A DNA stretch of 54,525 bases, counting the filler, from Sluysia triapertura (taxonomy: Eukaryota): NCBI GenBank assembly GCA_046118255.1. It is 4 parts of 4 records of this genome, joined end to end, with 100 filler letters (N's around TTAATTAATTAA, not from the genome) between each part and the next. Parts side by side here need not be neighbours in the genome. Positions count along the whole stretch, not along the records: positions 12,120 to 27,894 come from JBJNIA010219581.1; 3 more parts are not named here. One strand, 5' to 3'. The notes under the pieces were generated by a model. That model worked only from the letters and a program-made list of their open reading frames with translations, was not told where the DNA came from and did no database searches. The first letter of the stretch is position 1, and each line of letters starts with the position of its first letter. Both the position numbers and the translations under genes were made by a program. Shown piece by piece: positions 12,120-27,894 of this stretch.

Positions 12120-12230
12120 CAATAGTAAGAAGTGTGATTGCTTTAGAATTTATGTTTTATTGAAATTTAAATTATGGTTATTGGATATTATGTTTTAAAA
12201 AGTTTTAGGTTTTAAGTGTTGGCCACTACA
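12120..12230 (-). mobile_element. Terminus of TGTGGTGG-type repeat, cut by contig start
   Basis: Reverse complement reads TGTAGTGGCCAACACTTAAAACCTAAAA. Confidence 0.5.
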
Positions 12231-13764
12231 ATAATTAACATGAAGAAGTAGAAAAATAAATCCGAGAGGTGAAGGTGAAAACATTTAGAGTCTCATGAAT
12301 GCCCTATTAAACTACTATTAAGTTTAGGACCATTAACCATATAACTTTAAAACCCATTAAACATAAAATAAAATTAAGTTTAAAAATAGATTAATTAACA
12401 TAATTAAGGAAAAAAAACGTTTGAATGCAGAATGCTACATTACATTTGAAATTGTATATGTTTTTGTTTTAAAAAGACCTTTTGATGAAGGTGTGGTTCG
12501 ACCGAATGCATGCAAAGAAAGCCTTAATATTGAGTAAAGTCAAATTTTAATTAATTCTTAATTAAGGAATGTTGAATTTTTTATACTTCGAATGATTCTA
12601 ATATAATGAACTGAATATGAGATGATTGCTATGAGAAAAGAGAATTTAAAAGTGAGTTTGAAATGTTTATATAAAGGTTTGTTTAAGAAGTAGAATCTTA
12701 AACATGTTTCATTGGAAAGTTGGGTGTGAAAAATCGAAAATTAATTAATTCTAAAAAGTGAAATTAAATTCATTATTGTTGATTGTTATTTTAATTTGAG
12801 AAGAAATTTAAGTAAAAATAGATTGAGTACAACCATCATGGTTGAGAATAAATCAAATTTTTTGTTTTGCACCTGATGAAATTTAACAGAACCTACCATG
12901 TAATTGTCAAAGTTGTTTTTGCCGGTCTGATTCTTAAAGAGGTTTTGATTATTTGTGTGAGAGAGTGTTTGATTGTGAAATTCGGGATTGATTGGATGAC
13001 AAGAAAGTATAAAACGAAAAACTTAAAAAATTTACAACGCAAGTGCACATCAAGTTATATTCATTAGAAGAACATGCTTTTGGTAAGATTTAAATATTTT
13101 ATTTTGATTTTATTTTAATATTATTATTTTGATCATTATTAGCAATATTAATAAAAATTATTAAAACTAATGATGCATGAATTGCATTTATTGCACATGT
13201 GAATAAAATTTGATAGCCGTAAAAAAATTTATGTCCAATGTAATATAGTGAAAAACCACAGATTCAAAATTCTTTTGTATATTTGATTTTTAATATTCTA
13301 ATTGATACATCTTCATCTAATATAATCGTTTATTAGTAACCACAAATAAGTTAAAAGAAAAGCAGTTGAGTAATGCGGCTAGGCAAAATTGAAAGAGCAA
13401 TAGTAATAGATATAATGTGGTTGTATGAAGATAAGTAATCATAAAAATTAAGTTACTGATTAATTATTAAGATCAATATACATAAAATTGAAAAATTGCT
13501 GAATTTCTTTAAATAAACATAATAATCATACAATAATAAGATACATACAATAAGGTGTATGAAAAATATTTCGTTGCAATACTTCCAATATAAATCATGA
13601 TATAAATAGTTGAATAATAATGTCAAAATTCCAAAATAATTAATACTACAACCCATATTTAACAAATAAACAAACGTGATTTATGAAAAAATTCTAACAT
13701 ATTTTATTGTATATTTTATAATATTGTGAGAATAAAACGCTAATAGTAACAAAATTAGTTTAAA

Positions 13765-13900
13765 GCTGTGAGTTCACCAACGTACTGGACTTACCAGTGA
13801 GGACCAGCCGTTGGATTTTGACGTAAAAGAAAGATGCTTTAATAAGTCTCAAAAAACTTTAATCGACTCCTTAACTGAAATTATGGAGATAAATTAATAT
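13765..13900 (+). pseudogene. Relic paralogous to the C-terminal part of the CYHR1-like pseudogene near 36.8 kb
   Basis: gtgagttcaccaa..tggacttaccagtgaggaccagccgttggattttg matches the reverse complement of 36773-36820. Peptides are GLTSEDQPLDF versus GLTG*GQPLDF. Confidence 0.6.
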
Positions 13901-14739
13901 TATTTTAGTCTATCCTATTTATCTTAAAAAAGATTTTGCATGAATCCTACAATAAGGATTATTTAATTTTTTAATTAGGAAATATCTTTTAAATTATATT
14001 ACAAGTCAAGTCGTTTAATTCAGGAAAATATATTTTATCAAATGTGATAACAAAATAATAAAAATACAAGTTTTACATAAATTACCAATGTAATTTTTAT
14101 AGAAATATAAATTTTAAAAAGATTTTACAATGATCTATGATAAGATCATAAACATTAGAATATATTAATGATTTTACCTTGATTTTACACTGATATTAAA
14201 TAATATCAACCTTAATAAAAATAAGCTAACGTTGACAGATAAAAAAGAATCGTCTTTTCTATGAACCAAATTTTGTTTGTCTTCTCAAAACTGATTTGTC
14301 GAATGCTTATATTGAACGTAAATCACTAAGATTGATCCAACACGGTTAATAATTTAAAACTTCAGTTTAAAAGTTTGCAAGTTTAAAAACTTTTTATTGT
14401 TGTGCTCAATAATTTAAAACTTTATTGTTGTCGGTGAGAATTATCAAAATTGTGGTTCCATATATAGTTTTTTAAATGTCAACCTTTGACGTAAACAAAA
14501 TTTAGAAAATTAAAACATTAATATAACTAACTATTTATAAACTTCCAAAATTAATAAAATACAAAAAATCAATAAAATTATACGAAAATTTAATAAACAA
14601 AATTTAATCAATAATTATTCATACTAATTCATCATTGTTAATCAAATCACTATATTGTTATAAAAATAATCATTGTTATCAAAATACATTATCAAAGTAC
14701 ATCACAATACTTTAAAAAATTTTTATATTAAAAATCTAA

Positions 14740-14742
<3 letters not shown>

Positions 14743-14800
<58 letters not shown>

Positions 14801-14806
14801 GTAATA
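14743..14806. repeat. (AAT)n microsatellite
   Basis: About 20 AAT units. Confidence 0.97.
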
Positions 14807-15759
14807 ATATCATAATAATAATTCTTTTATAATAATAGTAACTTAATGAATAAATAATAATAATAATAATAAACGTAATAATAATTTTAATTTAGACTAC
14901 AAAATACATATCATTTGGAACGTAAGGCCTTTTAAGGTCACAAATATTATTTTACTATAAATATCATTACGTTATAATAATGATATTTATTATTATCAAT
15001 CTTTTATCGGCTTCTAACAGAAATTATTATTAAATATTAATCGTTAGTTTAATATTTTATAAGTAAACGTTTTAAAACGTTTAATTTTAATTATTGATAA
15101 AGACCTTTTAATTTATTATTAACATATTATTAAATTTCATTAAAGGAAGTTTTCTTTTTAATCTTGTAAAATGTTTTGTTAATATTATACTGTTAAAAAA
15201 CAAATTATCTGTTTATGAATAAATTTGGTATAAACTATATTGTCATTGATTATCATAGCCAATTGAGTAATTTTAATGTACTTTGTATTAATATATTTGA
15301 ATTTATAAGTGTTCTTTGTATAAATTGTATAATCTTATTAATTTGACAAATTTATATAATTTAACGTGATTTTTATTTTGAATTATTAATTACATTAAAT
15401 AAATTTTTTGAAATTCTATCAGTTTAATACACTTATAAATCTTGTAACGCTGTTTTCATAACATTATAACCGGAGAAATTTTGTTACTCTAATTTCTGTA
15501 TTATAATCTCAATAAACTCTCAATAGTGAAACCATTTTCCTTTCGTTAAAAATCTTGTCACTTAGGATTGTTTAAAAATCACTTAAGAAAAGTAGTTACA
15601 TCTATTTTTACCAAATCATTTTAATTGGAATTGCAGTTAAAATACATTAATTTATATAGTTTTAACTTCGTTAAATTACAACACGATTTGAATTCTATTT
15701 TTCGCTTTTAAGACCGATTCGTAGATATCGTTTAAAGGAGATCGAAAATAATATCGTTT

Positions 15760-16035
15760 ATATTTTATTCTCGATTTAAAGCGGAAATCTAATTAATTGC
15801 AAAAAATTTGTAATTGATATAATCTCGCTAAAAAAGCGGAAATTGAATCTGAATTGTAACAAGTAAGAAAAATAAAATTCAATTTGATATAATTTTAAAT
15901 CGACCTCCAACGCTCTATTTACAAACCTTTTTACCAACTTAAAATCCTACGAATTAGCCCTTTATTGTATAAGTCTGTCTAGGATAATAATCGAACTCAT
16001 AACATTTCAAATTATTTATTGGTAAGTTAAGCGAT
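15760..16035 (+). repeat. Dispersed repeat, copy 1 (copy 2 at ~50940-51165)
   Basis: Colinear blocks aattgatataatctcgc..aagcgga, aaatcctacgaattagc, gtctaggata..actcat..attatttattggtaag. Confidence 0.65.
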
Positions 16036-16979
16036 ACATTCTTAAGATAAATCTCTTTTTCATAAAAACCTACCAGTGTTGATAAAATTAAATAAATTCT
16101 GTTATTTAATTTTATTTATATTTCTAAGTATCTTCGCATTAAACATTATATTTTGTATTATCTAAAAACAGAATAAAAATTATGTTCATCTTCATAATAT
16201 TAATTTCATAGTTTAATTTGAATTATTAAATATTGTTATGTTAATATTCAGAGGATTGATCGTGACAATTTGTTAAATTTGTTGCATGAGTATCGCAGAA
16301 ACTCTGAGATTAAATAAATGAATTATAAGAATTGATAAAAATCAATAATTTTGTTTTTACTTACTTTATGCAATAGTTCAGATTCTTTATCACCTTTCGT
16401 TGGTAAATAAATATATGATTTGATTTTCTTTTCATATTGAAATTCAGTTTTAACTGCATTTAGCTATAAATAAAACAAATGCTCTAAATTTTATAAAAAA
16501 TTTTCTATCCTTTAATAGCATAAATAAATAAGTAAATATGCAAAAATTTTCAACATAATTAGTTTTTACGTATTTAATGAAAAACTTTCTGTATATACTG
16601 AATGAATCTCGACAAATATGTAAATCATGAATATTGTGATTATGTACAATATTAATATTTATTGTTAATGCTTATCTATATGCAGAAGTAGGTAACAAAT
16701 CAATTCAAAGTTCGGCAAAAGTATTGAATAAATGATAAATAGCTGTTTTTTTCGAACTGTAATCTAATCAGAGAAACAAATTGAATTTCTTTTATATCAC
16801 AGTAGATACTTTCTTCATTTTTAATACAAAATTGGCTGTATACTAAAATGTTATTAAAGATTTTAATGCATTTATAAATGCAAATTAATTTCACCTTATT
16901 TCAATACATAAACTTAATTTATTAAATATTTATTTCATAGACTATTTTTTAAATAATTTGACAAACATATTTTCAATTG

Positions 16980-17290
16980 CACTCAAACCTGTTTTTATGC
17001 GATTTTTTTGTGCGATCCCATAATTTAATTATTGAACTGACAATAATTTCAGTGTCAACGAATAAAATGTGCAAAACAATATTGCGATTGAATTTTTGGG
17101 TAGCATTGCAAAAATGCATTGATCCTGAAAAGATTGCGTGCCTCGTTATGTCGCCCAGTTGGTTGTTTGCTAATGAGCTAGTTGGAGACTAGTCTCATCT
17201 TTTGTTTTAACGAGTAGGTAGAAGTTTACTTGAAGGGAGCAAAGGGTTGTTTTTTCATTCATCTCTGATCTGCACAAGTGGCAAGTTTAG
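16980..17290 (-). mobile_element. Mutator/MULE transposase remnant
   Basis: Minus-strand INAFLQCYPKIQSQYCFAHFIR* fits the MULE motif (I.AF...FP......C.FH). GC is locally elevated and the ORF is broken. Confidence 0.4.
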
Positions 17291-18734
17291 TAAATAAAGT
17301 GATTTAATAAAAAAGAATATAACGTTTGTTTTAATTTAAAAACTAATTTTGTATAAAACACTGTTTCTTAATCGTGGGTACAAAAATCATTTCGGAATTG
17401 CGATAGAAGTTTCTAAAGAAACCTGTAAAGAAACCAGTCAACTACACTGACACATCGGATTTATCAACAAATGTAATTTATAAAATTTGAATTTTTATTA
17501 ATATTTTAAATACAACCATTACAATGTAGTTTGAAGAATAAACTCTAACACTAATATTTCTTATTAAGAATCCTCTACATTATCGATATAATTCTTGAAA
17601 TGAAGAAATATAAACATTATTCAAGGAAGTGCTCGAATTTATTTTTGAATTCAATGAGGATGATGATCACAAAAAATTTAAGAACTACTGTTCTAGATTA
17701 AGAAATTTATAATATTTTCATTAAATAATTGCAAAATCGTAATCTATAATAATTTAATATTTAGGTTCACTTGGAAAATAGTTACAAAACGTATTACTTT
17801 TCAAACATAAAATTATATTATATTATAAATTTTAATCTAAATATTATTTTGAATCGCATTTATCCATAACTTTAAAAATAAATTATTGATCAAAAAACAA
17901 TTCATGTATAACAATAAATCCAGACTGTACACACAAGAAAAATTTTGATAAAAACATAGAAACAAGCTAGTACCGGTACTTGACTAAAAAATTGTCACAA
18001 ATTTAAACAAATATAATTGGTTTTGTATGCATTTAGAAGCTGTGCTTTTTAACCCTAGGATAGATAATAATTATTAATATTGTAAAAAATAATTAATAGA
18101 GAATAATAATAATTGTTAATAATAATAAACTATCATTAATCATTAATAGAAAATTTACTAAAAAATAATTTATAGGACAAAATAATATAAAATAAATTAC
18201 AATTGTTATAAAATAACTAAATTAAATATCCAAAAAGTAATAACACAATCAGAGCAATATTGTGGATATAATATCATAATTACTATAAAGTTAAAGTAAC
18301 CACCAAAAAGCAATAATAATGTAAATAGAATATTGTGGATTTAATAATAAAATAATACAAAGAGACTATCGAAGCAAAAAAGTATAAATAGACGTCACAA
18401 TTGGGTTTATTGAAGAAATTTATCGAAAAAGTTTATTAAAGGTAACAAAGTTACTCGGGTAAAGGTACTTAATTAATAATTTTCTACTACCACAAATTTT
18501 TGAAACATTAACATTCATAATTAATTTTGATTAGAATAACAATTTAAAGAAAACATTATATCTAGTAATTATGTATAAAATGTTACGTGTGGTATTATTT
18601 TTATTGCATTTTTATAAACTAAATTTTGTCAAAATTATTATTCGAATTCATTAAGTTCTTTATAAACTATTTTTATATCGAGTAAATAAAGTATTGATTA
18701 ATTTTGTTTACTTAGTTTTATCTTAAAGGGAAGA

Positions 18735-18866
18735 AGAGAAATTGAACTTTAACCTTATTAAGTAAGAACGCACTTCCATCTCTTAAACCAGAGACGAGTG
18801 AACGATAACCTCAAGTTTATTATAAGTGTTAGAATACAATTACTATAAGCTCAAGTTCAATTCTCT
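18735..18866. repeat. ~130-bp foldback / MITE-like element
   Basis: AGAGAAATTGAACTT at the left and AAGTTCAATTCTCT at the right, with further imperfect pairing inward. Confidence 0.5.
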
Positions 18867-18949
18867 AAAAACAAATAATAATAAAAAATATAAACTCAAG
18901 TTTCAGCTTTATTCCACGTAAGTCACATAAAATTATTACTATTTTTATT

Positions 18950-19475
18950 TAATCCAGCACTAAGATTACCAAGAAAAAAAAATTATGTTGATTACCAAGC
19001 GTGGACAAAATTGCCCACAATACATATTTCATTATTTTGAATAAATTGCATACTTAAACACACTCATTACATATTATTCCCACCTTTGAATGTAAAAGAT
19101 AAACATAACTGTTACATTTACCAGAAATATTAGAAATTCTTTTAGATTTTGCTTTTCTTCGCTTTGACGGAATATTTATAATAAATAAAGCATCTTCCTC
19201 GGAATGTTGTTGATAATGGCTTTGATTCTGCTCAAATCATCAGTGTGTACAATTCTACAACGTTTCTTCTTTCTAGATGAAATTTGACTAACGCAAAACT
19301 AAGTACTTACATAAAGTTTATTATTCAGGTTTTATGAACAGAAATGATTTTAAATTGTACGGGAAATTTATAAAATTACAATAAAAAGTTTCAAAACTTC
19401 AGTTCAATATGATTATTCTAAAAAATTAAAATAACTGTGGACAATTTTGTCAACGCTTGGTAATTGTAGGGTTAA
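18950..19475 (-). mobile_element. Internally deleted piggyBac-family transposon
   Basis: 29-bp inverted repeats at 18991-19019 / 19436-19464. Right end is GGG-TTAA (19469-19475). Internal minus-strand FRGRC...(frameshift)IPSK matches the piggyBac transposase motif. The left terminus is degenerate. Confidence 0.75.
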
Positions 19476-20689
19476 TAAATGTATTTGACATATAATTCTT
19501 ATATCCTGTTTTATTTAAATTAGTTACAAAATAATTAACACATTCGCATCGGGAAACGAGAATTTCTTATAAATTCTGAGATAACGGGATTACATATTAA
19601 CAGTGCTACATTATTAAATGAGTTAGTACACAATTCGGTTATATATATTTTTATATCACTAAAAGACCATGATTTATAATAAATATTTAGTAAAAGTAGT
19701 CCGATACGAATGTGTCAAAATCACTTATGTAAAACAAAAATGATTCAAAACAATAATCATACTTGATCTAAATCATTCGGTGGTTTGATAACTTTAGTTG
19801 TAATTTTAAATTTATGTTTCAAAGAATTGGACTTATAAGTTAATTTCTCATATATAGGAATCACTAGATTAAATAAATACAAATATTTTATCAAATATAA
19901 TCAATGTTTAGTCATACTTTGTATAATTTATGCAAAATTTAAATAGATATTGTATAACAAAAATAACGATTTAATTGGATTAATCATTATAATATAAAAT
20001 AAAGCACAATTTATTACTATTTCATAAATCAATTAAATTTATGATACCACGACCTCAGGGAAAAAACTGCCACAACAGTCCAGAAGTTTTATTATTTAAA
20101 TATGATAATAATTGTCATAAGTTTTATGAGATGTATTTGTACAAACAATTATCATAAATTGATAAGGAATACTCATCACATATACGTGACGCTGATAGCG
20201 AAGGGGTTAATTAAATTTGCATGGAAAACGATATCTCTAAACGTTCGAAAATATATGATAATAAAAACGTTTATGATATTAATATTCAGTAAATTTATTG
20301 TTTGAAGCCACAATTTTCCACAATTTGGGCTTATTATTCTACCTTTCTGTTTTTTTTAAATGTAACTCAAGTATTTCTAATTTGATAATGGAAACATTAA
20401 AAATAATTATCATATAATAAATAGTAAGTGATAATGTCTATACAAAAAACAAAAAAACGCGCAGTAATATGTGAACATTTATAATCTGATTTAATCGATA
20501 ATATTATCATAAGATAATTTCTAAAGTAAACACTCACTAACCAATTTTGATAATGTTCATAATTGGAAACATTTTAAAGATTTTAACTGTGGTGGTTCAA
20601 CCTTCTTCAGTTAAAATTTTGCATTGATAAACCAACAAAACATTGCACAACAAAAATGACAGTACGGTTACCTAAACATATAAACAATT

Positions 20690-20970
20690 TGTGGTGGCCA
20701 ACCTAATATCCTAAAATTTTAATTTAACACTACACATAAAAATCATTCTTCATAATATTTAATAATTTATTTTTTTAGGATTCTTTAAAATTGTCAATAC
20801 TTTCAAACATTTTAAATTCAAAAGTTCATAACATTAAAATCTTAGTCAACATCGAAAATCATCAAACGTACAAATTTTACTCAACCCAAAACATTTCAAG
20901 TTCACAATCCTTCAATACTCAATCAGCGAAAAACATTAAATTCACATTTTAAAACCATTTTAAACATTGC
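20690..20970 (+). mobile_element. TGTGGTGG-type LTR-like repeat
   Basis: Starts TGTGGTGGCCAACCTA. Aligns at both ends with the reverse complement of 23345-23921 (caaaacatttcaa..aatcct.caata.tcaatc..aaaacattaaatt). A second terminus TGTGGTGGTTCAACCT lies at 20588. Confidence 0.7.
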
Positions 20971-21312
20971 AATCAAAATGGAATGTCTTTAACATCTTTA
21001 GTGATTCTCTTATCAGCTCTTTCCACATTTCACGTAGGATTTTAAATTCGTATATTACTATTGGGATCATTAAAAATGTAGTTACTTTCTTAAAATTTAA
21101 TTTTTTGTTAGAAAATTGGAAATTAAATTTATATTTCGTTATGATCATCGCGAGATATAAGATTTTAAGTTTATTGAAAAGAAATAACAATTTATACAAA
21201 ACGAAAAATTTATTCATAATACTAGAACTAAAAATGTTAGCGTTAATAAACTTTAACTTCTGCATATGTCTTCCTGTGGACCATGTTTCACTATCTAAAT
21301 AGAAAAATATAA

Positions 21313-22639
21313 CTAAAATATATTCAATGAATTATAAGGAATGATTAGTTCATTGTTGTTGAGAAAATTTACGCCTGATCGTTGAATTGTAGGACTGCTG
21401 GCAGTAGTCTTGGTAGCTTTAGTACTGATATCTGCGAATAAATAAGCTATCCTACTGTAGTGTGCCGATCGGACTGCAGGGTCGACATGAAACTCTTCTA
21501 ATTCATAAATTGCAAGGAGGTGTTTGCATTTTAAGCCAAATCGTTTGCATTTTCCATCCTGATTTGTTGCATATGGGCAAAGAGCCGTTTTGTAATACAT
21601 ATTAAAGCTTGACGAACTAAAGTCAATTTTACGATGATAGAAATCAACATTTTCGATTCATTAAATTTTAAATTTGTAAAAACACCTTCTACATCACATG
21701 TATTTCTTGATTCTGGAAAGTTCATTATTTGTGATTTTCTAAAATTCTTTTTATCTTTACTGCATGATTCGGATGGTAGAATTCGTAAAGCTTTATCAAT
21801 GTTTAGGGTTAATTGACAACTTATCATTTTATCTGCCTCATCCATTGCTAAATGTTGAATTTAATAAAAAATTTCTCTAATTAGATTCTTATGCTGCAGC
21901 ATCATCAGAATTTGACTAGGAGTTGCTGCAACTGTGTGTCAATATGAAAATTTCTAAGTTCAGTAATTCGAACAGTCATCTCTATATCTTCAGTTAAATG
22001 TATTATATTTAGATTTAATCCTTCACTTTTATTCAATAATTCTTGCTTTATCAAATTAATTGTGGTATCAAAGTCTTTATGTTAATTAGAGGTTGATTGA
22101 ACATAATAAGTAACAGTTTTTTTACAACAGGTTTCAAATAGACCAATGATATCTTTGCGTTGAATCACAACTGAAGTAGCATGTTGTTGGAGTTGATCCG
22201 ATTTTAACCATTTTAAATTAGCCATATTGTTCATAGGCAATAATTCCGAAGTGTTACGGATTTTTTGGAAACGTGATGGATAGGAAGGCCATAATATATT
22301 ATTTCGCATTTTTTGACATTCGTAAAGAACTTTGATATAATTAGGCAATATGCGAGCTTTAAACAAAACGTTGTACGGATTATTGGATATATTTAGACAC
22401 ATTTTATCTAATGATGAATTATATGATATAAGTAACATTTTAACGATAATAAAAGAAACATTAACTTTATTTGCCAATTCATCGATAATTTTATTTAACA
22501 TTATTTCCGCATTGTTAATTTGTAGTTCTTCATAAAGTAAATATTTCGTATCTATTTTAGGTTCATCAGCTTTATAATCACCTTCAAAATAATAATCTTC
22601 TCCTGTTTTATAATATTCTGTGTCAGTATCATCATACAT
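21313..22639 (-). pseudogene. Chimeric intronless gene: Ariadne-2 (ARIH2) N-terminal UBA-like region + DEAD-box helicase domain 1 + Unkempt-type CCCH finger
   Basis: Residues 1-100 are ARIH2-like (EDYY...LNKIIDELANKVNVSFIIVKMLL...LFKARILPN). Q-motif/Walker A QLQQHATSVVIQRKDIIGLFETCCKKT. Motif Ib AATPSQIL (21912-21923). Motif II IQHLAMDEADKMI. YYKTALCPYATNQDGKCKRFGLKC. Two TAA stops and two frameshifts. Confidence 0.75.
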
Positions 22640-22764
22640 TTACTAATTTTTTAATATTGAATAATCGATGAAAGCGTTGCTAAATCTTTTAAAGCGTGCT
22701 TTTTCGTTGTTACTAATAATACAAACTATTAATTGAAAATATTTTTTGTAATTGTATTTGTGTA

Positions 22765-22950
22765 TTGTCACTGTCTGACCAATCAAACAGGTATTGAGGA
22801 AGTACTAAAAATTTTAGTTGATGAGCCAGTAAAAGCGTTAGTATACAATAAAACGACATCAAAGTACGATTAACTGTCATCAGTCGACAGTTAACGAAAC
22901 GGCGCACTGAAAATGATTTTAAATGCCTGTCGACTGATGGCAGATTAAAT
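22765..22950 (-). promoter_or_regulatory. Cis-module with two CTGTC-N7-GACAG palindromes and a CCAAT box upstream of the chimeric gene
   Basis: TTAACTGTC-ATCAGTC-GACAGTTAA at 22870-22894. Inverted copy (16/17) at 22927-22943. GACCAATCA near 22777. Confidence 0.55.
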
Positions 22951-23344
22951 AGTTAGAATACAAGAATAATTAGGAGGACACCATTATTTGGTAATTGCTA
23001 ATAAATAATGTTAATTACAATAAAATAATAATGATAATGAATAAAATAAATTAATGATAATACAAGGAAAACAAAATATGAAAGCATAAATCTCTTTAAT
23101 ATCTTATAAACATGATCTTTCTTGTAAATAAAATATTTGACATATTGTAATTTTTCTAATAAAAGTTATTTCTTGTTATTCTGTTTGTTATGTGAATGCT
23201 TGGCTTCATTGCTTATACTTTTGACATATAAGTTGTGCTTCTTATTCCTTAGGGAAATATTATATAAAAAAAGAAACTGTTAAGATAATGTTTGGAAGAA
23301 ACGATCGATGCAAGAGCGTTTAGGGAATGTTATTTTGATAAAAA

Positions 23345-23921
23345 CATCAAAAAGGTTTAAAAGTGTTAATTTAATGTTTTCAGTGATAATAGAGATTGAA
23401 TATTGTAGGATTATAAATTTGAAATGTTTTGAATTAGTTTGAAGGTGTAATTTGTAATTCTGATGTTATGAAATAATGAATAAAATGTTTTAAATGACTT
23501 TTCAATATATTGATGGTTTGAGATGTAAATTGTGGTTTGAATGGTGAGGGTTTGTGAATTGAGCTGTTTTGAATAAACTTTAAATTGTAGCTTAATGGTT
23601 TTAAATGTAATTATGGTTCTGATGTTATGAATTATAGGTTAAAATGTTTTAAGTAAATTTTAATATGCGTTAATGGTCTGGACGTAGATGAAATTTTAAT
23701 GTTATAAAGTATGAAATGGAATTGTTTTGAGAAATTGTGATAAAGTTTTATTGAAAATAAAGGGGACAAAATGTGAAAAGATTTAAATGTAAAAGTATTT
23801 AAAATATAAAATTTTATGTTTGAAGTGTTTGATGATATTAAGCGTGTAAAAAAATGGTAAAGAGTGATTTTGTTATGTCAAAAAAATAAAATTTGTTAAA
23901 AGTTATAGGTTAGCCACCACA
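23345..23921 (-). mobile_element. TGTGGTGG-type LTR-like repeat (long copy)
   Basis: Ends TAGGTTAGCCACCACA on the plus strand, strong G/T skew, homologous to 20690-20970 and 39307-39700. Confidence 0.7.
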
Positions 23922-24349
23922 TTTCATATATTTGTAATCATCAATAAAGTCTCGTCCAAAGAAAATAAGAATTAGAACAAATATTTCAAAAATCATTTAA
24001 AGAAAGAAATGAAGTATTTCATAAACAAGGAAGAAAAGAACAAAAGATTTATACATTTTTATATAACTATTTCTTTTATTCATTTGTTAATTATTATTAC
24101 CATTTTTATTCGTTATTATTAAAAGATCATGTAAGGTAAAAAAATTAGAAGAGACTTAAAGAAATTTATGTATTTTATTATTTTAATTTGTCATTATTTC
24201 TATTTTTATTACTTATTATTATTTTTATTTTATATATTATTATTATCGCCATTTTTTTATTATTTTTCATTTTATTATTACTATTAGTATTATTATTATC
24301 TTTATATTATTTAAAATATTAGCACAAGTTATATTAGCAACTATATCAC

Positions 24350-24535
24350 CTGTCAGTACTTGACAGTTTTAAATTAAATAAAGTTTATATCATCGTATTA
24401 ACTGTCAACTACTGACAGTCTCATTACCAAAAATCAGAATTACGACTTATACAAAGTATTATCAGTGGACATCCAATCACGACTCTGTTAATAGTGCCAG
24501 AAAGAGCTTGATTAATAAAAATTTAGAAAAGATAT
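24350..24535 (+). promoter_or_regulatory. Cis-module with two CTGTCA-N5-TGACAG palindromes and GGACATCCAATCAC
   Basis: CTGTCAGTACTTGACAG 24350-24366, CTGTCAACTACTGACAG 24402-24418, GGACATCCAATCAC 24467-24480. Confidence 0.55.
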
Positions 24536-24736
24536 TTTTAGTCAAACGTAACTTACCAGAGATCAATATAGAGTGAAAAACTTGTCGGTCTTTAAATAGA
24601 AATTTCAGATTGTATAAACAGCAATTTTAATTATTTAGTTAATCAGAATATTATGCATAGTTAATATTTGTTAAAATAAAGACGAAATTTAAATGTACGT
24701 TTACTTTTATATTTTACTATCATTTGGTATCAAAAA

Positions 24737-25574
24737 ATGTTCAAAAAATCAAGAAAATGGAACAAACGAAAACGAAAAGAATTTTATAATTCTGATGAAG
24801 AATGTGAAGAAACACCAAAAGAATTTAAAATGTTTAATAAAGTTAGATCTAGATACATTTACGTTCACGAATCAACTTCGACAATAAAAATCTTATTACA
24901 AAATCGATTAGTTACTGAAGCAAAAGAAATTATTAGAAAAGTAGATGCAGTTTATCATAGAAAGTTAATAATTGAATTTTGTGTTATAGTCAGTCAAGAA
25001 TGTTTTCAATTGATATATGTTACACCAGAAACTTCATATAAAATTCCAAATAATTGGTACAAAGAATTAAGGCAACATCATTCATATATGTTTCATAATG
25101 TTACAGTCAATAGATTTGTTCCTGAATATGTTCTACCTATTAAAAACAAAATGGCTACAACCTAATTCTTCTCAAGATAAAATTTCATCTGTCAATGGAA
25201 AAATGTTATTTCATTCATATATAATCAAAATTGTGAACACGTTAACTTCAAGACAATATTTAATGATTATACGTATAGTCAGATTGTTTCAAAGATAAAA
25301 TCCAACGTTGATAATGAAGTACGTTTTTATCGAGACTAATAAAATCGACATATTTGAATTTATAATTAATTGTGTTTCCAAAAGACTTCATTTTATTTTG
25401 TCACCTGTTATGTTTAAAGAAAATTTATCCGCAAAATGCATTCTATCTTCAAAGGACATGCTTAATAACATTGAAACCCAATACCGACATAATGTGACTA
25501 CAATAGGTATTATGATAATTCTCTTACTGTCAATTCAAGATCATCAATTATTTCAATTACTTTTATTTTTATAA
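24737..25574 (+). pseudogene. Degraded gene with basic NLS-like start and possible BTB/POZ domain
   Basis: 142-aa ORF plus downstream fragments. KKSRKWNKRKRK, then RYIYVH...EAKEIIRKVD...LIIEFC, resembles BTB (FYVHK...EI.I.DVD...LLIEFCY). Confidence 0.45.
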
Positions 25575-26998
25575 CGAATAATCTAAAGTAAGACTAAAAA
25601 CATCTAAACCAAACCTAAACATTTAAAGATTGAAAAATTAAAATTGATTTTGTTCAATATTAAGGTTTACCCGACTAAATCATATACCTTAATCTAAAAG
25701 AATAAAACTAATTATGCAGTCTTAATTTTATCACAGCATTCCCTATTCAAACGTTATATTATAAACGTTTTCTTTAAGTTAATTAATCTATTTTTAGAAT
25801 ATATCATATCATACTACAAATGTTCTAAAATTATTTAGAACTTAGTAAATTATTCAGGAAGTTCTAGATTTTTCTACCTTCACCACTCTTATTGTCACTA
25901 ATTATTAGCGTACTAAATTTGTCTTCCTTATCAATAAGAATAAATTTACTTCATAAGTATTTTAAATATTTGATATTTTATAAGGTTGTCTAATGATCTT
26001 AAACATTTACTAAAGTTCTAGATAATCTTAAATGTAAAGTAAATATTACAAATAACTTGAAACTATATGACAACACACTGTAGATTTTCGTTTGCTTATT
26101 TTTACAAAAGGTATTAAAATAACACGCATTAGTGAAAACAATGATTTCAAAATATCAATAAGAGTTTATATGTACGCTAGTCGTACATTTAATTGTTTGG
26201 ATCTTTAGAAGGATTATTTTTAAAGTGACATGATGTAAAGTAGTTATATCACAACTAACATATAAACGAAAAACGCAATGTCCAGATACAAAGGAGAGTT
26301 TTAAGTTTCTATTGTTTAAGTTCTACCAGAACACCAAGACTATATTTATTAAGTAAAATCTTACCTGTTTGTGTTAAGTTTTAAAAGTATATATTTGAAT
26401 GTAGATTGTAGCGATGACGATGCTTATTTTAAAGAGCTATAAATTTATGTAATAGATTATCATTTTGTTAGATTAAATTATAGGAGTTTATAAGTTTATA
26501 AACTTTATAATTTGGCTTCGACTTAGTTCTTTTTACCTATATTATTTTCTAACACTTGTATCAACTTCTGGAGGTTATTGTTCATTCGTCTCTGGTGTAA
26601 GAGATGGAAGTGCAATTTTGTTGATTAACGTTAAAATTCAAGCTCTTCTCCTTAAAATCAAATAATATAAACTAAACTCACTAGAAGTTTATTTATCAAA
26701 TGTAAGTAGCAAATACAAAACCTACAAAAAATATTTTGGATAATATTCACAATATAAAAGGTACCACAAGTAATTATATTTTGGGTGCTTATAAATTTCT
26801 TAAAATTAAATTTATATTGAACACTACTTTTAAAGGTTACTCTGATGAAATTTTCAGTTGAATAGTATAATTGTAAATTGTATTTTAAATTGTAAAATGT
26901 CAATTATTCAATTACCTTGAGTTGGATATAATAAATATCTTGAACTCGAAGAGTAGTTTTGATATCTTCAATGAGTAGCTTCTTCAACAAATATTCTC

Positions 26999-27088
26999 CA
27001 AATAATAATTGCAAATGGGACCAAATAACTTTTTCAAATAATAATTGCAAATTGAACCAAATATCTTCAAATAATAATTGCAAATTGA
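26999..27088. repeat. Three-copy minisatellite, core CAAATAATAATTGCAAAT, periods 36 and 33 bp
   Basis: Cores at 26999, 27035 and 27068. Confidence 0.9.
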
Positions 27089-27894
27089 ATGACACCCATC
27101 TATTTATACTTGATTCTTTCCATAATAATGATATTTCCAATTTTTGTAATAAAGTAATATATAGTAAAATTACTTTTTGATACTGTTTTATTTACACTAT
27201 AGTTTGGTATTATTTTATAATATATGTTATTATTTTTTCCTGTTAATTTTAATTACTACTATTTCATTCACTTATTGTTTATTATTATGTGATTATTTTT
27301 TGACTTAATTCTTAATTTAATATTTTTCTGTATTATAATTTTTGCAATAATTTTATTGTCTTTAATGTGGTTTTTTTGTTGTAATTAAATTTTAGATATT
27401 TTGCAAAGAGATTGTATTATTAATGAACAATCTTTACAATTTGTAAACTAATAATTTGAAGCCAGTGCCAATTATATTGGTAGAAGGCGAGAGAATTTAT
27501 CTACCTAATACGAAATCATTCAATATGCAAAATTTATAAGGCGGTATTTTGAAAGCTACTGCATGACTCTGTCAAAGATAACAACAATGATCATGCTAAA
27601 AGAAATAATCTTCGGGATCCACTAGAATGCACTTAACAAGAACTGGTTATGTCGTACTTTTGCCGGTCTATTCTACAGTATGAGTCCTGAAGAAGACACA
27701 TGTTACTTATAATTGGGTTCTAAATGTTTTCTCAAACTATTGTCAAAGTTAAATTGTCATATTTTTATCGTGTTATTTTATTATTTTGTAAATATTATTC
27801 CTATTATAATTAAAACTTAAAATTATTTATTAAATTCAAATTAAAGAAAATTTAAAAATAAAATATAAAATTTAGAAAATTAAAATATCATAAA

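What the first reader, a model, noticed from the sequence alone, without database searches (positions are those of the whole stretch)
22765..24535. Mirror-image cis-modules with paired 17-bp CTGTC-N7-GACAG palindromes at fixed 52-53 bp spacing
Seen: sites at 22874 and 22927 (53 bp apart), and at 24350 and 24402 (52 bp apart). Within each pair the two sites are inverted copies of each other (16/17 identical, including the spacer), but the spacers differ between pairs. Each pair has a CCAAT element on its gene-facing side and a gene ~230-320 bp away, giving divergent genes around the central repeat. Known: TGACAG is the MEIS/TGIF/PKNOX half-site, CCAAT is the NF-Y site, and 52-53 bp is about five helical turns. 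Inference: either a dedicated promoter architecture for this gene class, or recombinase/transposase-type sites (palindromic arms plus matched asymmetric spacer).
Basis: partly seen in the sequence, partly recalled or inferred. Interest (0 to 1): 0.7.

Follow-up and report, generated by a model that had tools for sequence, protein, structure and literature searches.

The report
Conserved hairpin inside a repeated mobile element
The two "mirror-image" palindrome pairs are real, but they are the best-conserved internal part of a transposable-element family with thousands of copies in this genome, and they face each other only because one copy inserted backwards into another.

Summary

They are not a unique promoter. 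The genome (619 Mb) holds 243 exact CTGTC-N7-GACAG pairs against 0 for the reversed control.

Each pair is a roughly 67-bp hairpin module inside a dispersed 2.6-3.1 kb element. In the element's sense direction the order is:
- a 5' end reading TGTGGTGGCCAACC (2,862 exact copies, control 0);
- AC-rich tandem repeats and a TTA-rich tract;
- the hairpin module;
- ATTGG-N4-CCAAT palindromes;
- one intronless open reading frame (ORF) with a single CCCH zinc finger and no detectable relatives;
- a 3' end reading ...CCT(A), flanked by 7-8 bp direct repeats.

Window 21031-23916 is one copy (A, minus sense). It sits inside the 5' region of another copy (B, plus sense), and a related copy shows the empty site. 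That insertion creates the mirror image and the "divergent genes".

The arms covary between subfamilies. The module stays 92-99% identical between copies whose flanks no longer align.

I read it most probably as the upstream element of the element's own promoter. A strand-specific hairpin used in mobilisation, or an RNA signal, remains open. An inversion switch and a MITE are not supported. The element fits no known superfamily tested here.

The parts
22874..22943 (-). Hairpin module of element A: arms 22874-22890 and 22927-22943 (16/17 complementary), 36-nt AT-rich loop
   Evidence: (single-strand DNA fold -17 to -19 kcal/mol, z -4.8 to -5.6)
24350..24418 (+). Hairpin module of element B: arms 24350-24366 and 24402-24418 (16/17 complementary), 35-nt AT-rich loop
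21031..23916 (-). Element A, a 2,886-bp insertion. Its 5' motif TGTGGTGGCTAACC is at 23908-23921 on the minus strand. Its 3' end ...AAAATCCTA is at 21035-21043. The exact register at the ends is ambiguous by up to 5 bp.
   Evidence: (empty site in C194341 = L019); (22 contigs break off at 23921)
21023..21030 (.). Left copy of the 8-bp duplication CCACATTT that flanks element A
23917..23924 (.). Right copy of the 8-bp duplication CCACATTT. Its first 5 bases also read as the family's terminal TGTGG on the minus strand.
20690..21030 (+). Element B, 5' part, beginning with TGTGGTGGCCAACC at 20690-20703. It is interrupted by element A.
23917..25616 (+). Element B, remainder: TTA-rich tract, module, CCAAT, and the ORF from 24737. 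About 555 bp, including the zinc finger, are missing at 25539 relative to L019. The 3' end is ...AAACCAAACCT at 25606-25616.
22779..22783 (+). CCAAT (ATTGG in the sense of element A), 91 bp downstream of module A in that sense
24473..24477 (+). CCAAT of element B, 55 bp downstream of module B
22085..22639 (-). N-terminal 185-aa piece of the ORF of element A. The reading frame continues past an in-frame stop and then shifts, so this copy is broken.
21316..21657 (-). C-terminal piece of the ORF of element A, with the C-x8-C-x5-C-x3 zinc-finger motif (the last ligand is lost in this copy)
   Evidence: (zf-CCCH_UNK, E 8e-6, below the curated cut-off)
24737..25165 (+). N-terminal 142-aa piece of the ORF of element B
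   Evidence: aligns with the L019 ORFs
22944..23907 (-). 5' region of element A. It is G+T-rich on the plus strand (AC-rich in sense) and carries units repeated at about 140-160 bp spacing (e.g. 23458-23502 and 23617-23661).
   Evidence: very high summed contig depth at 23336-23677
24166..24312 (+). TTA-rich low-complexity tract directly upstream of module B. A tract of this kind is typical of the family.

Best explanation
Each 'cis-module' is a conserved inverted repeat of about 67 bp (17-bp arms, AT-rich loop of 26-36 nt). It lies inside a lineage-specific mobile element of 2.6-3.1 kb that is present in thousands of copies.

The element, read in its sense direction:
- 5' terminus TGTGGTGGCCAACC;
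- a conserved leader with AC-rich repeat units;
- a TTA-rich tract;
- the hairpin module;
- one or two ATTGG-N4-CCAAT palindromes, 40-130 bp further on;
- from about 240-500 bp after the module, one intronless ORF of roughly 440 aa with a single CCCH zinc finger near its C-terminus;
- 3' terminus ...CCT(A), with 7-8 bp direct repeats of the target on both sides.

In the window, copy A (21031-23916, minus sense) has inserted into the 5' region of copy B (plus sense). The two modules and the two broken ORFs therefore face away from each other. This much is shown.

Mechanism (inferred). The module is the upstream element of the element's own Pol II promoter. It offers four TGACAG-type half-sites in a symmetric array, next to a tract that melts easily. 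Together with the palindromic CCAAT boxes it would drive transcription of the ORF from a start about 50 bp upstream of the ATG. Arm complementarity would be kept either because the repeat must extrude or fold, or through template-switch correction of the quasi-palindrome.
For: Family membership and copy number.
- 243 exact paired modules against 0 control.
- The 5' motif occurs 2,862 times against 0.
- The CCAAT palindrome occurs 4,909 times against 275.
- A 6-kb query around the finding gave 7,548 first-look candidates, with copies at 72-92% identity.
- A 185-aa ORF piece gave 964 candidates, and all 150 that were scored had E <= 3.5e-15.

Nested insertion.
- In C194341, homology to window 20687-21030 abuts homology to 23917-25539, overlapping on CCACATTT.
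- The ends of A coincide with the family's 5' motif and with the 3' limit of homology among A-type copies.
- 22 contigs break off at 23921.

Termini. Flanking 7-8 bp direct repeats abut the termini in 5 of 5 copies that have both ends.

Fixed context and orientation.
- The 5' motif lies 600-1,170 bp upstream of the module, and loop orientation agrees with it in 13 of 14 informative copies.
- The TTA-rich tract lies upstream.
- CCAAT palindromes lie downstream.
- The zinc-finger ORF lies about 0.7-1.4 kb downstream, even in subfamilies with no DNA similarity.

Constraint on the module.
- The module is 92-99% identical between copies whose adjacent 200 bp are at background identity. Examples: L014 and L036, 99% against 64-66%; L002 and L040, 96% against 69%.
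- Position 6 of the outer half-sites was not part of the search pattern, yet it is invariant in 37 of 37 modules.
- The arms covary: 24 cells changed on both sides, reached by 0 of 500 shuffles; one pair reads CG in 24 copies, UA in 7 and AU in 4.

Promoter geometry (inference). In A the CCAAT box is 91 bp after the module. The block conserved among A-type copies starts at 22689, which is 50 bp before the ATG and about 90 bp after the CCAAT box.
Against: There are no transcript data. No RNA run holds the region, so the transcription start, and whether the module is itself transcribed, are unknown.

Protein binding alone does not explain why the spacers of the two arms covary.

Mismatches in the stem are mostly C.A on the sense strand, which is G.T on the antisense strand. 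After correcting one orientation error the count is 32 against 8 cells. This hints at a hairpin on the antisense strand rather than a duplex binding site. The skew is weak once inheritance is allowed for: 12 against 7 by cluster and column.

Some copies found through the gene, not the module, have lost one arm or the whole module. L018 and L058 have none; L017 and L021 have one arm. These could simply be decayed copies.

The class of the element, and therefore how it moves, is unresolved. If it moves through RNA transcribed from its 5' end, the module would lie in the transcript and not upstream of it.
Confidence: 0.6

Rival explanations
1. The module is a strand-specific single-strand DNA hairpin, or an extruded cruciform, that the mobilisation or replication machinery of the element recognises. 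This would be comparable in principle to the subterminal hairpins of IS200/IS605 elements and Helitrons, or to origin hairpins. The adjacent (TTA)n tract would serve as the melting region.
For: The arms covary and the stem is kept. Stem mismatches are mostly of the type tolerated as G.T on the antisense strand. An AT-rich, easily melted tract lies directly upstream. The module is conserved far beyond its flanks. The element has no terminal inverted repeats or LTRs and encodes no known transposase, so an unusual mechanism is possible.
Against: The module lies 600-1,170 bp from the 5' end and more than 1.5 kb from the 3' end, so it is not subterminal. Its distance to the terminus varies, while its link to the CCAAT boxes and the ORF start is tighter. 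No HUH or Rep-type protein is encoded. The flanking repeats of about 8 bp fit a staggered double-strand cut better than single-strand transposition.
Confidence: 0.18
2. The element is transcribed from its 5' end, like a LINE that carries only an ORF1-type gene. The module would then be an RNA stem-loop in the long leader. It would present an AU-rich loop to the element's own CCCH zinc-finger protein, which is of an RNA-binding type, and would act as a cis packaging signal.
For: The only recognisable domain of the ORF is a CCCH finger of the unkempt/tristetraprolin type, which binds AU-rich single-stranded RNA (PDB 5elh E 0.002 and 1m9o E 0.06; the binding preference is from general knowledge). 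The loop is AU-rich with a conserved TTTAATTAAA start. The arms covary. The 5' region has tandem repeat units like the monomers of some LINE 5' regions (the comparison is from memory). The genome carries thousands of reverse-transcriptase genes that could act in trans.
Against: On the sense strand the recurrent mismatch is C.A, which does not pair in RNA. Flanking repeats are close to 8 bp in 5 of 5 copies, rather than variable as in target-primed reverse transcription. There is no poly(A) or simple-repeat tail. CCAAT palindromes just upstream of the ORF look like a promoter inside the supposed transcript. No RNA data exist.
Confidence: 0.15
3. The two sites of a pair are targets of a site-specific recombinase: short inverted arms around a matched asymmetric spacer, as in lox or FRT. 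Recombination between them would invert the intervening segment of about 33 bp as a switch.
For: The two sites of each pair carry the same spacer in inverted orientation, and spacers differ between copies. Partner sites of such recombinases would need exactly this.
Against: Loop orientation is the same relative to independent markers in 13 of 14 informative copies, and relative to the downstream CCAAT boxes in the copies displayed. No strand-changing joints were listed across the region, though contigs cannot show rare forms. No recombinase is encoded in the element. The arms are only 5-6 bp and the sites about 50 bp apart, which from general knowledge is very short for synapsis.
Confidence: 0.03
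4. Each module is a tiny foldback element or MITE in its own right. Its two arms would be its terminal inverted repeats, and it would be scattered independently through the genome.
For: Copy number is high. In one pair (L014 and L036), only the module plus about 35 bp upstream is alignable.
Against: No target duplication flanks the module. Its position and orientation inside the larger element are constant. The same flanking features recur even where the sequences do not align: a TTA-rich tract upstream and CCAAT palindromes downstream.
Confidence: 0.03

Closest known systems
Internal promoters and 5' regions of autonomous transposable elements, such as LINE 5' regions built of tandem monomers, and ORF1-only 'half-LINE' derivatives (from general knowledge)
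   Same: A repeated 5' region, a single ORF with an RNA-binding type zinc finger, thousands of mostly broken dispersed copies, and no LTRs or terminal inverted repeats.
   Different: No reverse transcriptase or endonuclease ORF and no poly(A) or microsatellite tail. Flanking repeats are uniformly about 8 bp. The zinc finger is CCCH, not the CCHC knuckle usual in ORF1 or Gag. A CCAAT-type promoter sits just before the ORF.
hAT and P superfamily DNA transposons
   Same: A target duplication of about 8 bp. The 3' end ...CCTA resembles the outer bases of some hAT ends. There are internal and subterminal repeats (hAT end sequences are from memory).
   Different: The two ends are not inverted repeats of each other (TGTGGTGGCC... 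against ...AATCCTA). No hAT, BED, THAP or DDE domain is detected.
Palindromic enhancer and origin repeats of large DNA viruses, such as baculovirus hr palindromes (from memory)
   Same: Imperfect palindromes that recur with the same core, bind dimeric factors, and sit next to promoters.
   Different: Here there is one module per element, inside a 3-kb chromosomal mobile element. No viral genes were found.
TALE-homeodomain (MEIS/TGIF/PREP) TGACAG sites and NF-Y CCAAT boxes
   Same: The outer hexamers are exactly CTGTCA/TGACAG in 37 of 37 modules. CCAAT pentamers lie 40-130 bp downstream.
   Different: The CCAAT boxes are mostly 14-bp palindromes of two inverted pentamers 4 bp apart, which is not the single NF-Y box. 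The covariation of the spacers is not explained by half-site recognition. Binding is untested.
lox/FRT-type recombination sites in inverted orientation
   Same: Inverted arms around an asymmetric spacer that matches between the two partner sites.
   Different: The arms are only 5-6 bp. The orientation of the intervening segment is fixed across copies. No recombinase gene is present.

Membership tests
Transposable element (generic) | Many dispersed copies with different flanks | tested here: met
   the 5' flanks of different copies are unrelated
Transposable element (generic) | A filled site and an empty site, with a target duplication | tested here: met
   Window 21031-23916 is absent at the homologous place of C194341, and the 8-bp CCACATTT is duplicated. 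Direct repeats of 7-8 bp are seen in 5 of 5 copies with both ends.
MITE / foldback element (the module on its own) | Terminal inverted repeats at the very ends, flanked by a target duplication, with insertion in varied contexts | tested here: not met
   No duplication flanks the module, and its context and orientation are constant.
hAT / P / other TIR DNA transposons | Terminal inverted repeats | tested here: not met
   The ends TGTGGTGGCC... and ...AAAATCCTA are not complementary.
hAT / P / other TIR DNA transposons | A transposase domain (DDE, hAT dimerisation, BED or THAP) | tested here: not met
   Pfam finds only a weak CCCH finger. There are no homologues among 1.84 billion representatives. 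Only five ORF pieces, all from the two window copies, were scanned against Pfam.
LTR retrotransposon | Direct long terminal repeats | tested here: not met
   The 5' motif never occurs twice in direct orientation about 3 kb apart in the loci held. The 5' and 3' regions are unlike each other.
Non-LTR retrotransposon or a dependent retroposon | A 3' poly(A) or simple-repeat tail, target duplications of variable length, and 5' truncation | tested here: inconclusive
   There is no tail and the repeats are about 8 bp in 5 of 5 copies. Many partial copies exist, but contig ends confound the picture.
Helitron | 5' TC, 3' CTRR preceded by a hairpin, insertion between A and T, no target duplication | tested here: not met
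   The termini are TGTGG... and ...CCT(A), the flanking repeats are 7-8 bp, and the hairpin is internal.
Invertible segment with lox/FRT-like sites | Both orientations of the segment occur | tested here: not met
   13 of 14 informative copies share one orientation. No strand-change joints were listed (contigs only, so rare forms cannot be excluded).
Known structured RNA (Rfam), tRNA | A match to a covariance model | tested here: not met
   0 matches at E <= 1 over 12120-27894; no tRNA.
CCCH (C-x8-C-x5-C-x3-H) zinc-finger proteins | The cysteine and histidine spacing, and a profile match | tested here: met
   The motif is present in ORFs of 5 or more subfamilies. Pfam zf-CCCH_UNK scores E 8e-6 at 26.1 bits, below the 31.1-bit cut-off. 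PDB unkempt scores E 0.002.
NF-Y / MEIS-type promoter elements | Binding of the factor, and position relative to a mapped transcription start | not testable with these tools
   No RNA runs hold the region. Only the motif occurrences are shown.

The most novel reading that the evidence does not exclude
The family could be a previously undescribed kind of eukaryotic mobile element. It has no terminal inverted repeats, no LTRs, no reverse transcriptase and no known transposase, and it makes 8-bp target duplications. It carries only an orphan CCCH-finger protein. Its deeply conserved internal hairpin would be the strand-specific structure at which that protein, or a host enzyme it recruits, starts copying or cutting the element.
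Probability: 0.12. Interest if true: 0.8.

Novelty: new variant of a known kind. Interest (0 to 1): 0.45.

Why it matters
For annotation. The "divergent genes with mirror-image promoters" are two decayed copies of one repeat family. Thousands of similar loci in this genome should be masked as repeats and not called as genes or regulatory modules.

For mobile-element biology. The family is abundant and old enough to have subfamilies that share no alignable DNA. All of them still keep a 67-bp hairpin, palindromic CCAAT boxes and a CCCH-finger ORF that has no detectable relative in 1.84 billion protein clusters. An element that fits none of the superfamilies tested, with a cis-element under this much constraint, is a tractable system. 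One reporter or mobilisation assay with compensatory arm mutations would tell whether the repeat works as duplex DNA, as a single-strand hairpin, or as RNA.

Tried and rejected
Known RNAs. Rfam at E <= 1 and tRNA scans over the whole piece found nothing.

The ORF.
- Pfam gave only a sub-threshold CCCH finger and a weak Tenui_N match (E 0.002, 18 bits), which I regard as noise.
- The word-based protein search found 0 and the protein Atlas gave no usable hit.
- The PDB sequence search matched only zinc fingers.
- The full HMMER search of 1.84 billion representatives found 0.
- AlphaFold2 on 13 natural ORF pieces reached mean pLDDT 43, so no fold search was attempted.

Other collections. I scanned viral and metagenome contigs for the paired pattern. 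The matches are GC-rich bacterial hairpins or tandem arrays, with no AT-rich loop, CCAAT palindrome or 5' motif.

Reads. Only one run holds the region. It is not on record as RNA and is probably the source sample. Laying its contigs on the region showed paralogues and no inversion.

Literature. One search on CCCH, transposable elements and hairpins returned nothing relevant.

Considered and dropped.
- An LTR structure and a tRNA primer-binding reading of the 5' motif.
- A circle-junction or site-specific integration model. Only A, and weakly L025, have TGTGG-like sequence after the 3' end. A-type copies sit in different flanks.

As a result, reverse-transcriptase loci and the copies with the longest open frames could not be fetched.

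The organism was not identified, because its names are coded. No contig that I took for human was met.
Full report
**1. The observation**

The pattern CTGTC-N7-GACAG is exact at 22874, 24350 and 24402, against 0 expected in 100 shuffles. A one-mismatch copy lies at 22927.

Each pair is an inverted repeat. The first has 17 nt at 94% complementarity with a 36-nt loop. The second has 19 nt at 95% with a 31-nt loop. The two modules lie in opposite orientation (repeat I9).

As single strands they fold at -14 to -19 kcal/mol, with z-scores of -4.7 to -5.8 against shuffles. CCAAT lies at 22779-22783 and 24473-24477. ATG codons follow 235 bp and 319 bp from the modules. No Rfam family and no tRNA matches anywhere in the piece.

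**2. It is a family, not a unique locus**

The window's genome has 619 Mb in 263,945 contigs and about 22-30% G+C locally. It holds the following exact counts.

| Pattern | Matches | Reversed control |
|---|---|---|
| Paired modules | 243 | 0 |
| Single sites | 2,639 | 128 |

A 251-bp query around module 1 finds copies at up to 88% identity over about 230 bp.

A 6-kb query shows that the whole neighbourhood is repeated. It gave 7,548 first-look candidates. The "gene" at 21054-22689 has many copies at 72-92% identity, and 23917-25539 has others. The rest of the contig is repeat-rich as well.

**3. Why the modules are mirror images**

In contig C194341, homology to window 20687-21030 runs directly into homology to 23917-25539. 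The two stretches overlap on the 8 bases CCACATTT. These 8 bases stand at 21023-21030 and again at 23917-23924.

So 21031-23916 (2,886 bp) is an insertion, which I call copy A. Its gene lies on the minus strand. It sits inside the 5' region of copy B, whose gene lies on the plus strand.

Three further results agree:
- The ends of A coincide with the family's 5' motif and with the 3' limit of homology among A-type copies.
- Other B-like copies (L003, L009, L015) run from the 5' motif to their module without the insertion.
- Contigs of the one public run that holds the region show paralogous forms that skip about 3.1-3.3 kb here, and 22 contigs break off at 23921.

The "central repeat" is the repeat-rich 5' region of A plus the TTA-rich tract of B.

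**4. Anatomy of the element**

In the sense direction the element reads as follows.

- **5' terminus.** TGTGGTGGCCAACC occurs 2,862 times exactly against 0 for the control. It is found 600-1,170 bp upstream of modules and is preceded by unrelated flanks.
- **Leader.** A conserved leader with AC-rich repeat units follows. Then comes a TTA-rich tract.
- **Module.** The hairpin module comes next.
- **After the module.** A weak TTNCT follows directly. Within 40-130 bp there are one or two copies of the 14-bp palindrome ATTGG-N4-CCAAT. That palindrome occurs 4,909 times in the genome against 275 for the control.
- **ORF.** An intronless ORF follows. Overlapping open pieces from different copies cover about 440 aa without introns. 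It has one C-x8-C-x5-C-x3-H finger near the C-terminus, in at least five subfamilies that share no DNA similarity.
- **3' terminus.** The element ends ...CCT(A).

In 5 of 5 copies with both ends, direct repeats of 7-8 bp abut the two termini, and element length is 2.6-3.1 kb. For A the register is ambiguous. The exact duplicate AAATGTGG (in sense) overlaps the family's terminal TGTGG. Either A lacks its own first 5 bases, or its duplication has diverged.

The ends are not inverted repeats, and there are no LTRs.

Most sampled copies carry stops or frameshifts. B has also lost about 555 bp, including the finger. The genome search did list open frames of up to 387-419 aa, which I could not fetch.

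**5. The ORF is an orphan**

- Pfam sees only a sub-threshold CCCH finger.
- The PDB sequence search matches only unkempt and tristetraprolin type fingers.
- The word search, the Atlas and a full HMMER pass over 1.84 billion cluster representatives find nothing.
- An AlphaFold2 model is unusable, at mean pLDDT 43.
- No transposase, recombinase, Rep or reverse-transcriptase domain was detected in the five window ORF pieces scanned against Pfam. ORFs from other loci were listed but not scanned, apart from the L012 and L058 ORFs searched by sequence.
- The genome does hold thousands of reverse-transcriptase genes elsewhere.

**6. The module is under constraint**

I aligned 37 modules in sense orientation.

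- The outer hexamers are CTGTCA and TGACAG in all 37. Their sixth base was not part of the search pattern.
- The loop begins with a conserved TTTAATTAAA-like stretch and ends ...TAA.
- The arms covary. 24 cells are changed on both sides, a value reached by 0 of 500 shuffles, and sliding the partner columns destroys pairing. One pair reads CG in 24 copies, UA in 7 and AU in 4. Because the sequences are related, these counts overstate the number of independent events.
- Between copies, the module is far better kept than its surroundings.

| Pair of copies | Module identity | Adjacent 200 bp |
|---|---|---|
| L014 and L036 | 99% | 64-66% |
| L002 and L040 | 96% | 69% |
| L050 and L055 | 94% | 69-73% |

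The alignment background for unrelated segments is about 65-73%.

Copies found through the gene, and not through the module, show every stage of decay:
- three intact pairs (A, L022, L025);
- four with the outer half-site of the first arm lost (L020, L024, L026, L027; L059 is the same contig as L026);
- three with one recognisable arm or site (L017, L021, L057);
- two or three with none (L018, L058, perhaps L023).

This is what dead copies would be expected to look like.

**7. Readings that are excluded**

- **An inversion switch.** Loop orientation agrees with the independent 5' motif in 13 of 14 informative copies. The one exception rests on a weak motif hit with three mismatches. No strand-changing joints were listed, although contigs cannot show rare forms.
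- **A free-standing MITE.** The module has no duplication of its own and sits in a constant context.
- **A structure shared with other organisms.** Matches in viral and metagenome contigs are unrelated hairpins or tandem arrays, mostly in GC-richer contigs.

**8. How it most likely works**

Shown: the anatomy, the nesting, the copy number and the constraint. What follows is inferred.

The module keeps a tighter relation to the CCAAT palindromes and the ORF start than to the element's end. In A the CCAAT box is 91 bp after the module. The block conserved among A-type copies begins at 22689, about 90 bp after the CCAAT box and 50 bp before the ATG. This is the geometry expected of a Pol II promoter with a CCAAT box at about -90 and the module at about -185 to -255.

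I therefore favour an upstream promoter element that offers four TGACAG-type half-sites beside an easily melted tract.

Two facts keep the single-strand readings alive. First, half-site binding does not explain covariation of the spacers. Second, stem mismatches are mostly C.A on the sense strand, which is G.T on the antisense strand. After correcting the orientation of L025 the count is 32 against 8 cells, but only 12 against 7 by cluster and column. Template-switch correction of quasi-palindromes could also produce the covariation without selection. That point is from general knowledge.

I put the structural account at about 0.9. Among functions, I give the promoter element about 0.45, a DNA hairpin used in mobilisation about 0.2, and an RNA signal bound by the CCCH protein about 0.15.

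**9. Limits**

- No RNA data exist for this organism in the runs served.
Reverse-transcriptase loci, the longest open copies and further empty sites could not be examined.
- The organism's name is coded, and I did not identify it.
All protein work used natural open pieces.

Noticed in passing
window 26467-27456: Another repeat family of about 1 kb (2,302 first-look candidates, copies at 74-91% identity). It contains a 36-bp tandem repeat at 26988-27089. It is unrelated to the hairpin element.
   Followed up: no
window 16978-17350, 18061-19500: Further dispersed repeat families (2,431 first-look candidates for 14700-20700). The whole contig is a mosaic of repeats.
   Followed up: no
window 12217-12230 (minus strand): A third copy of the family's 5' motif (TGTAGTGGCCAACA, 2 mismatches) lies near the start of the piece. 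It may be the 5' end of another element running off the contig.
   Followed up: no
window 25539 (element B): B lacks about 555 bp that are present in the related copy L019. The missing stretch includes the zinc-finger part of the ORF.
   Followed up: partly
L036:2-910 and L037:4181-5101: These are host-gene fragments next to modules. L036 has an eIF4A-like DEAD-box exon directly upstream of a module that appears cut off about 35 bp before its first arm. L037 has a 7-TM receptor-like ORF. Both identifications are by eye and not confirmed by a search.
   Followed up: no
L018:~1150-1300 and L058 (upstream of the ORF): Some A-type copies have no hairpin module. Instead they carry palindromes of the type ATTGGTTG-N-CCAACCAA in the same place.
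   Followed up: no
L038, 249-524 bp downstream of its module: The ORF of this subfamily begins with a motif that looks like a RanBP2-type zinc finger (W-x-C-x2-C ... C-x2-C). This was seen by eye only.
   Followed up: no
window 21316-21600 (minus strand): A weak Pfam match of the ORF tail to the Tenuivirus/Phlebovirus nucleocapsid family (E 0.002, 18 bits, below the cut-off). The alignment of other copies gave no sign of such a domain; they were not scanned against Pfam. I treat it as noise.
   Followed up: partly
window 20771-20941, 23336-23677, 24191-24361: Summed contig depth in the public DNA run is 10-100 times that of the ORF parts. The 5' leader and its repeat units are therefore shared at 90% identity or more by many more copies than any one ORF subfamily.
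   Followed up: no
L022:1848-1918 and window 22765-22790: Next to the CCAAT box of A-type copies lies a second, degenerate TGTCAC-TG-N-CTGAC motif. It overlaps the box and forms a weak extra module in L022.
   Followed up: no
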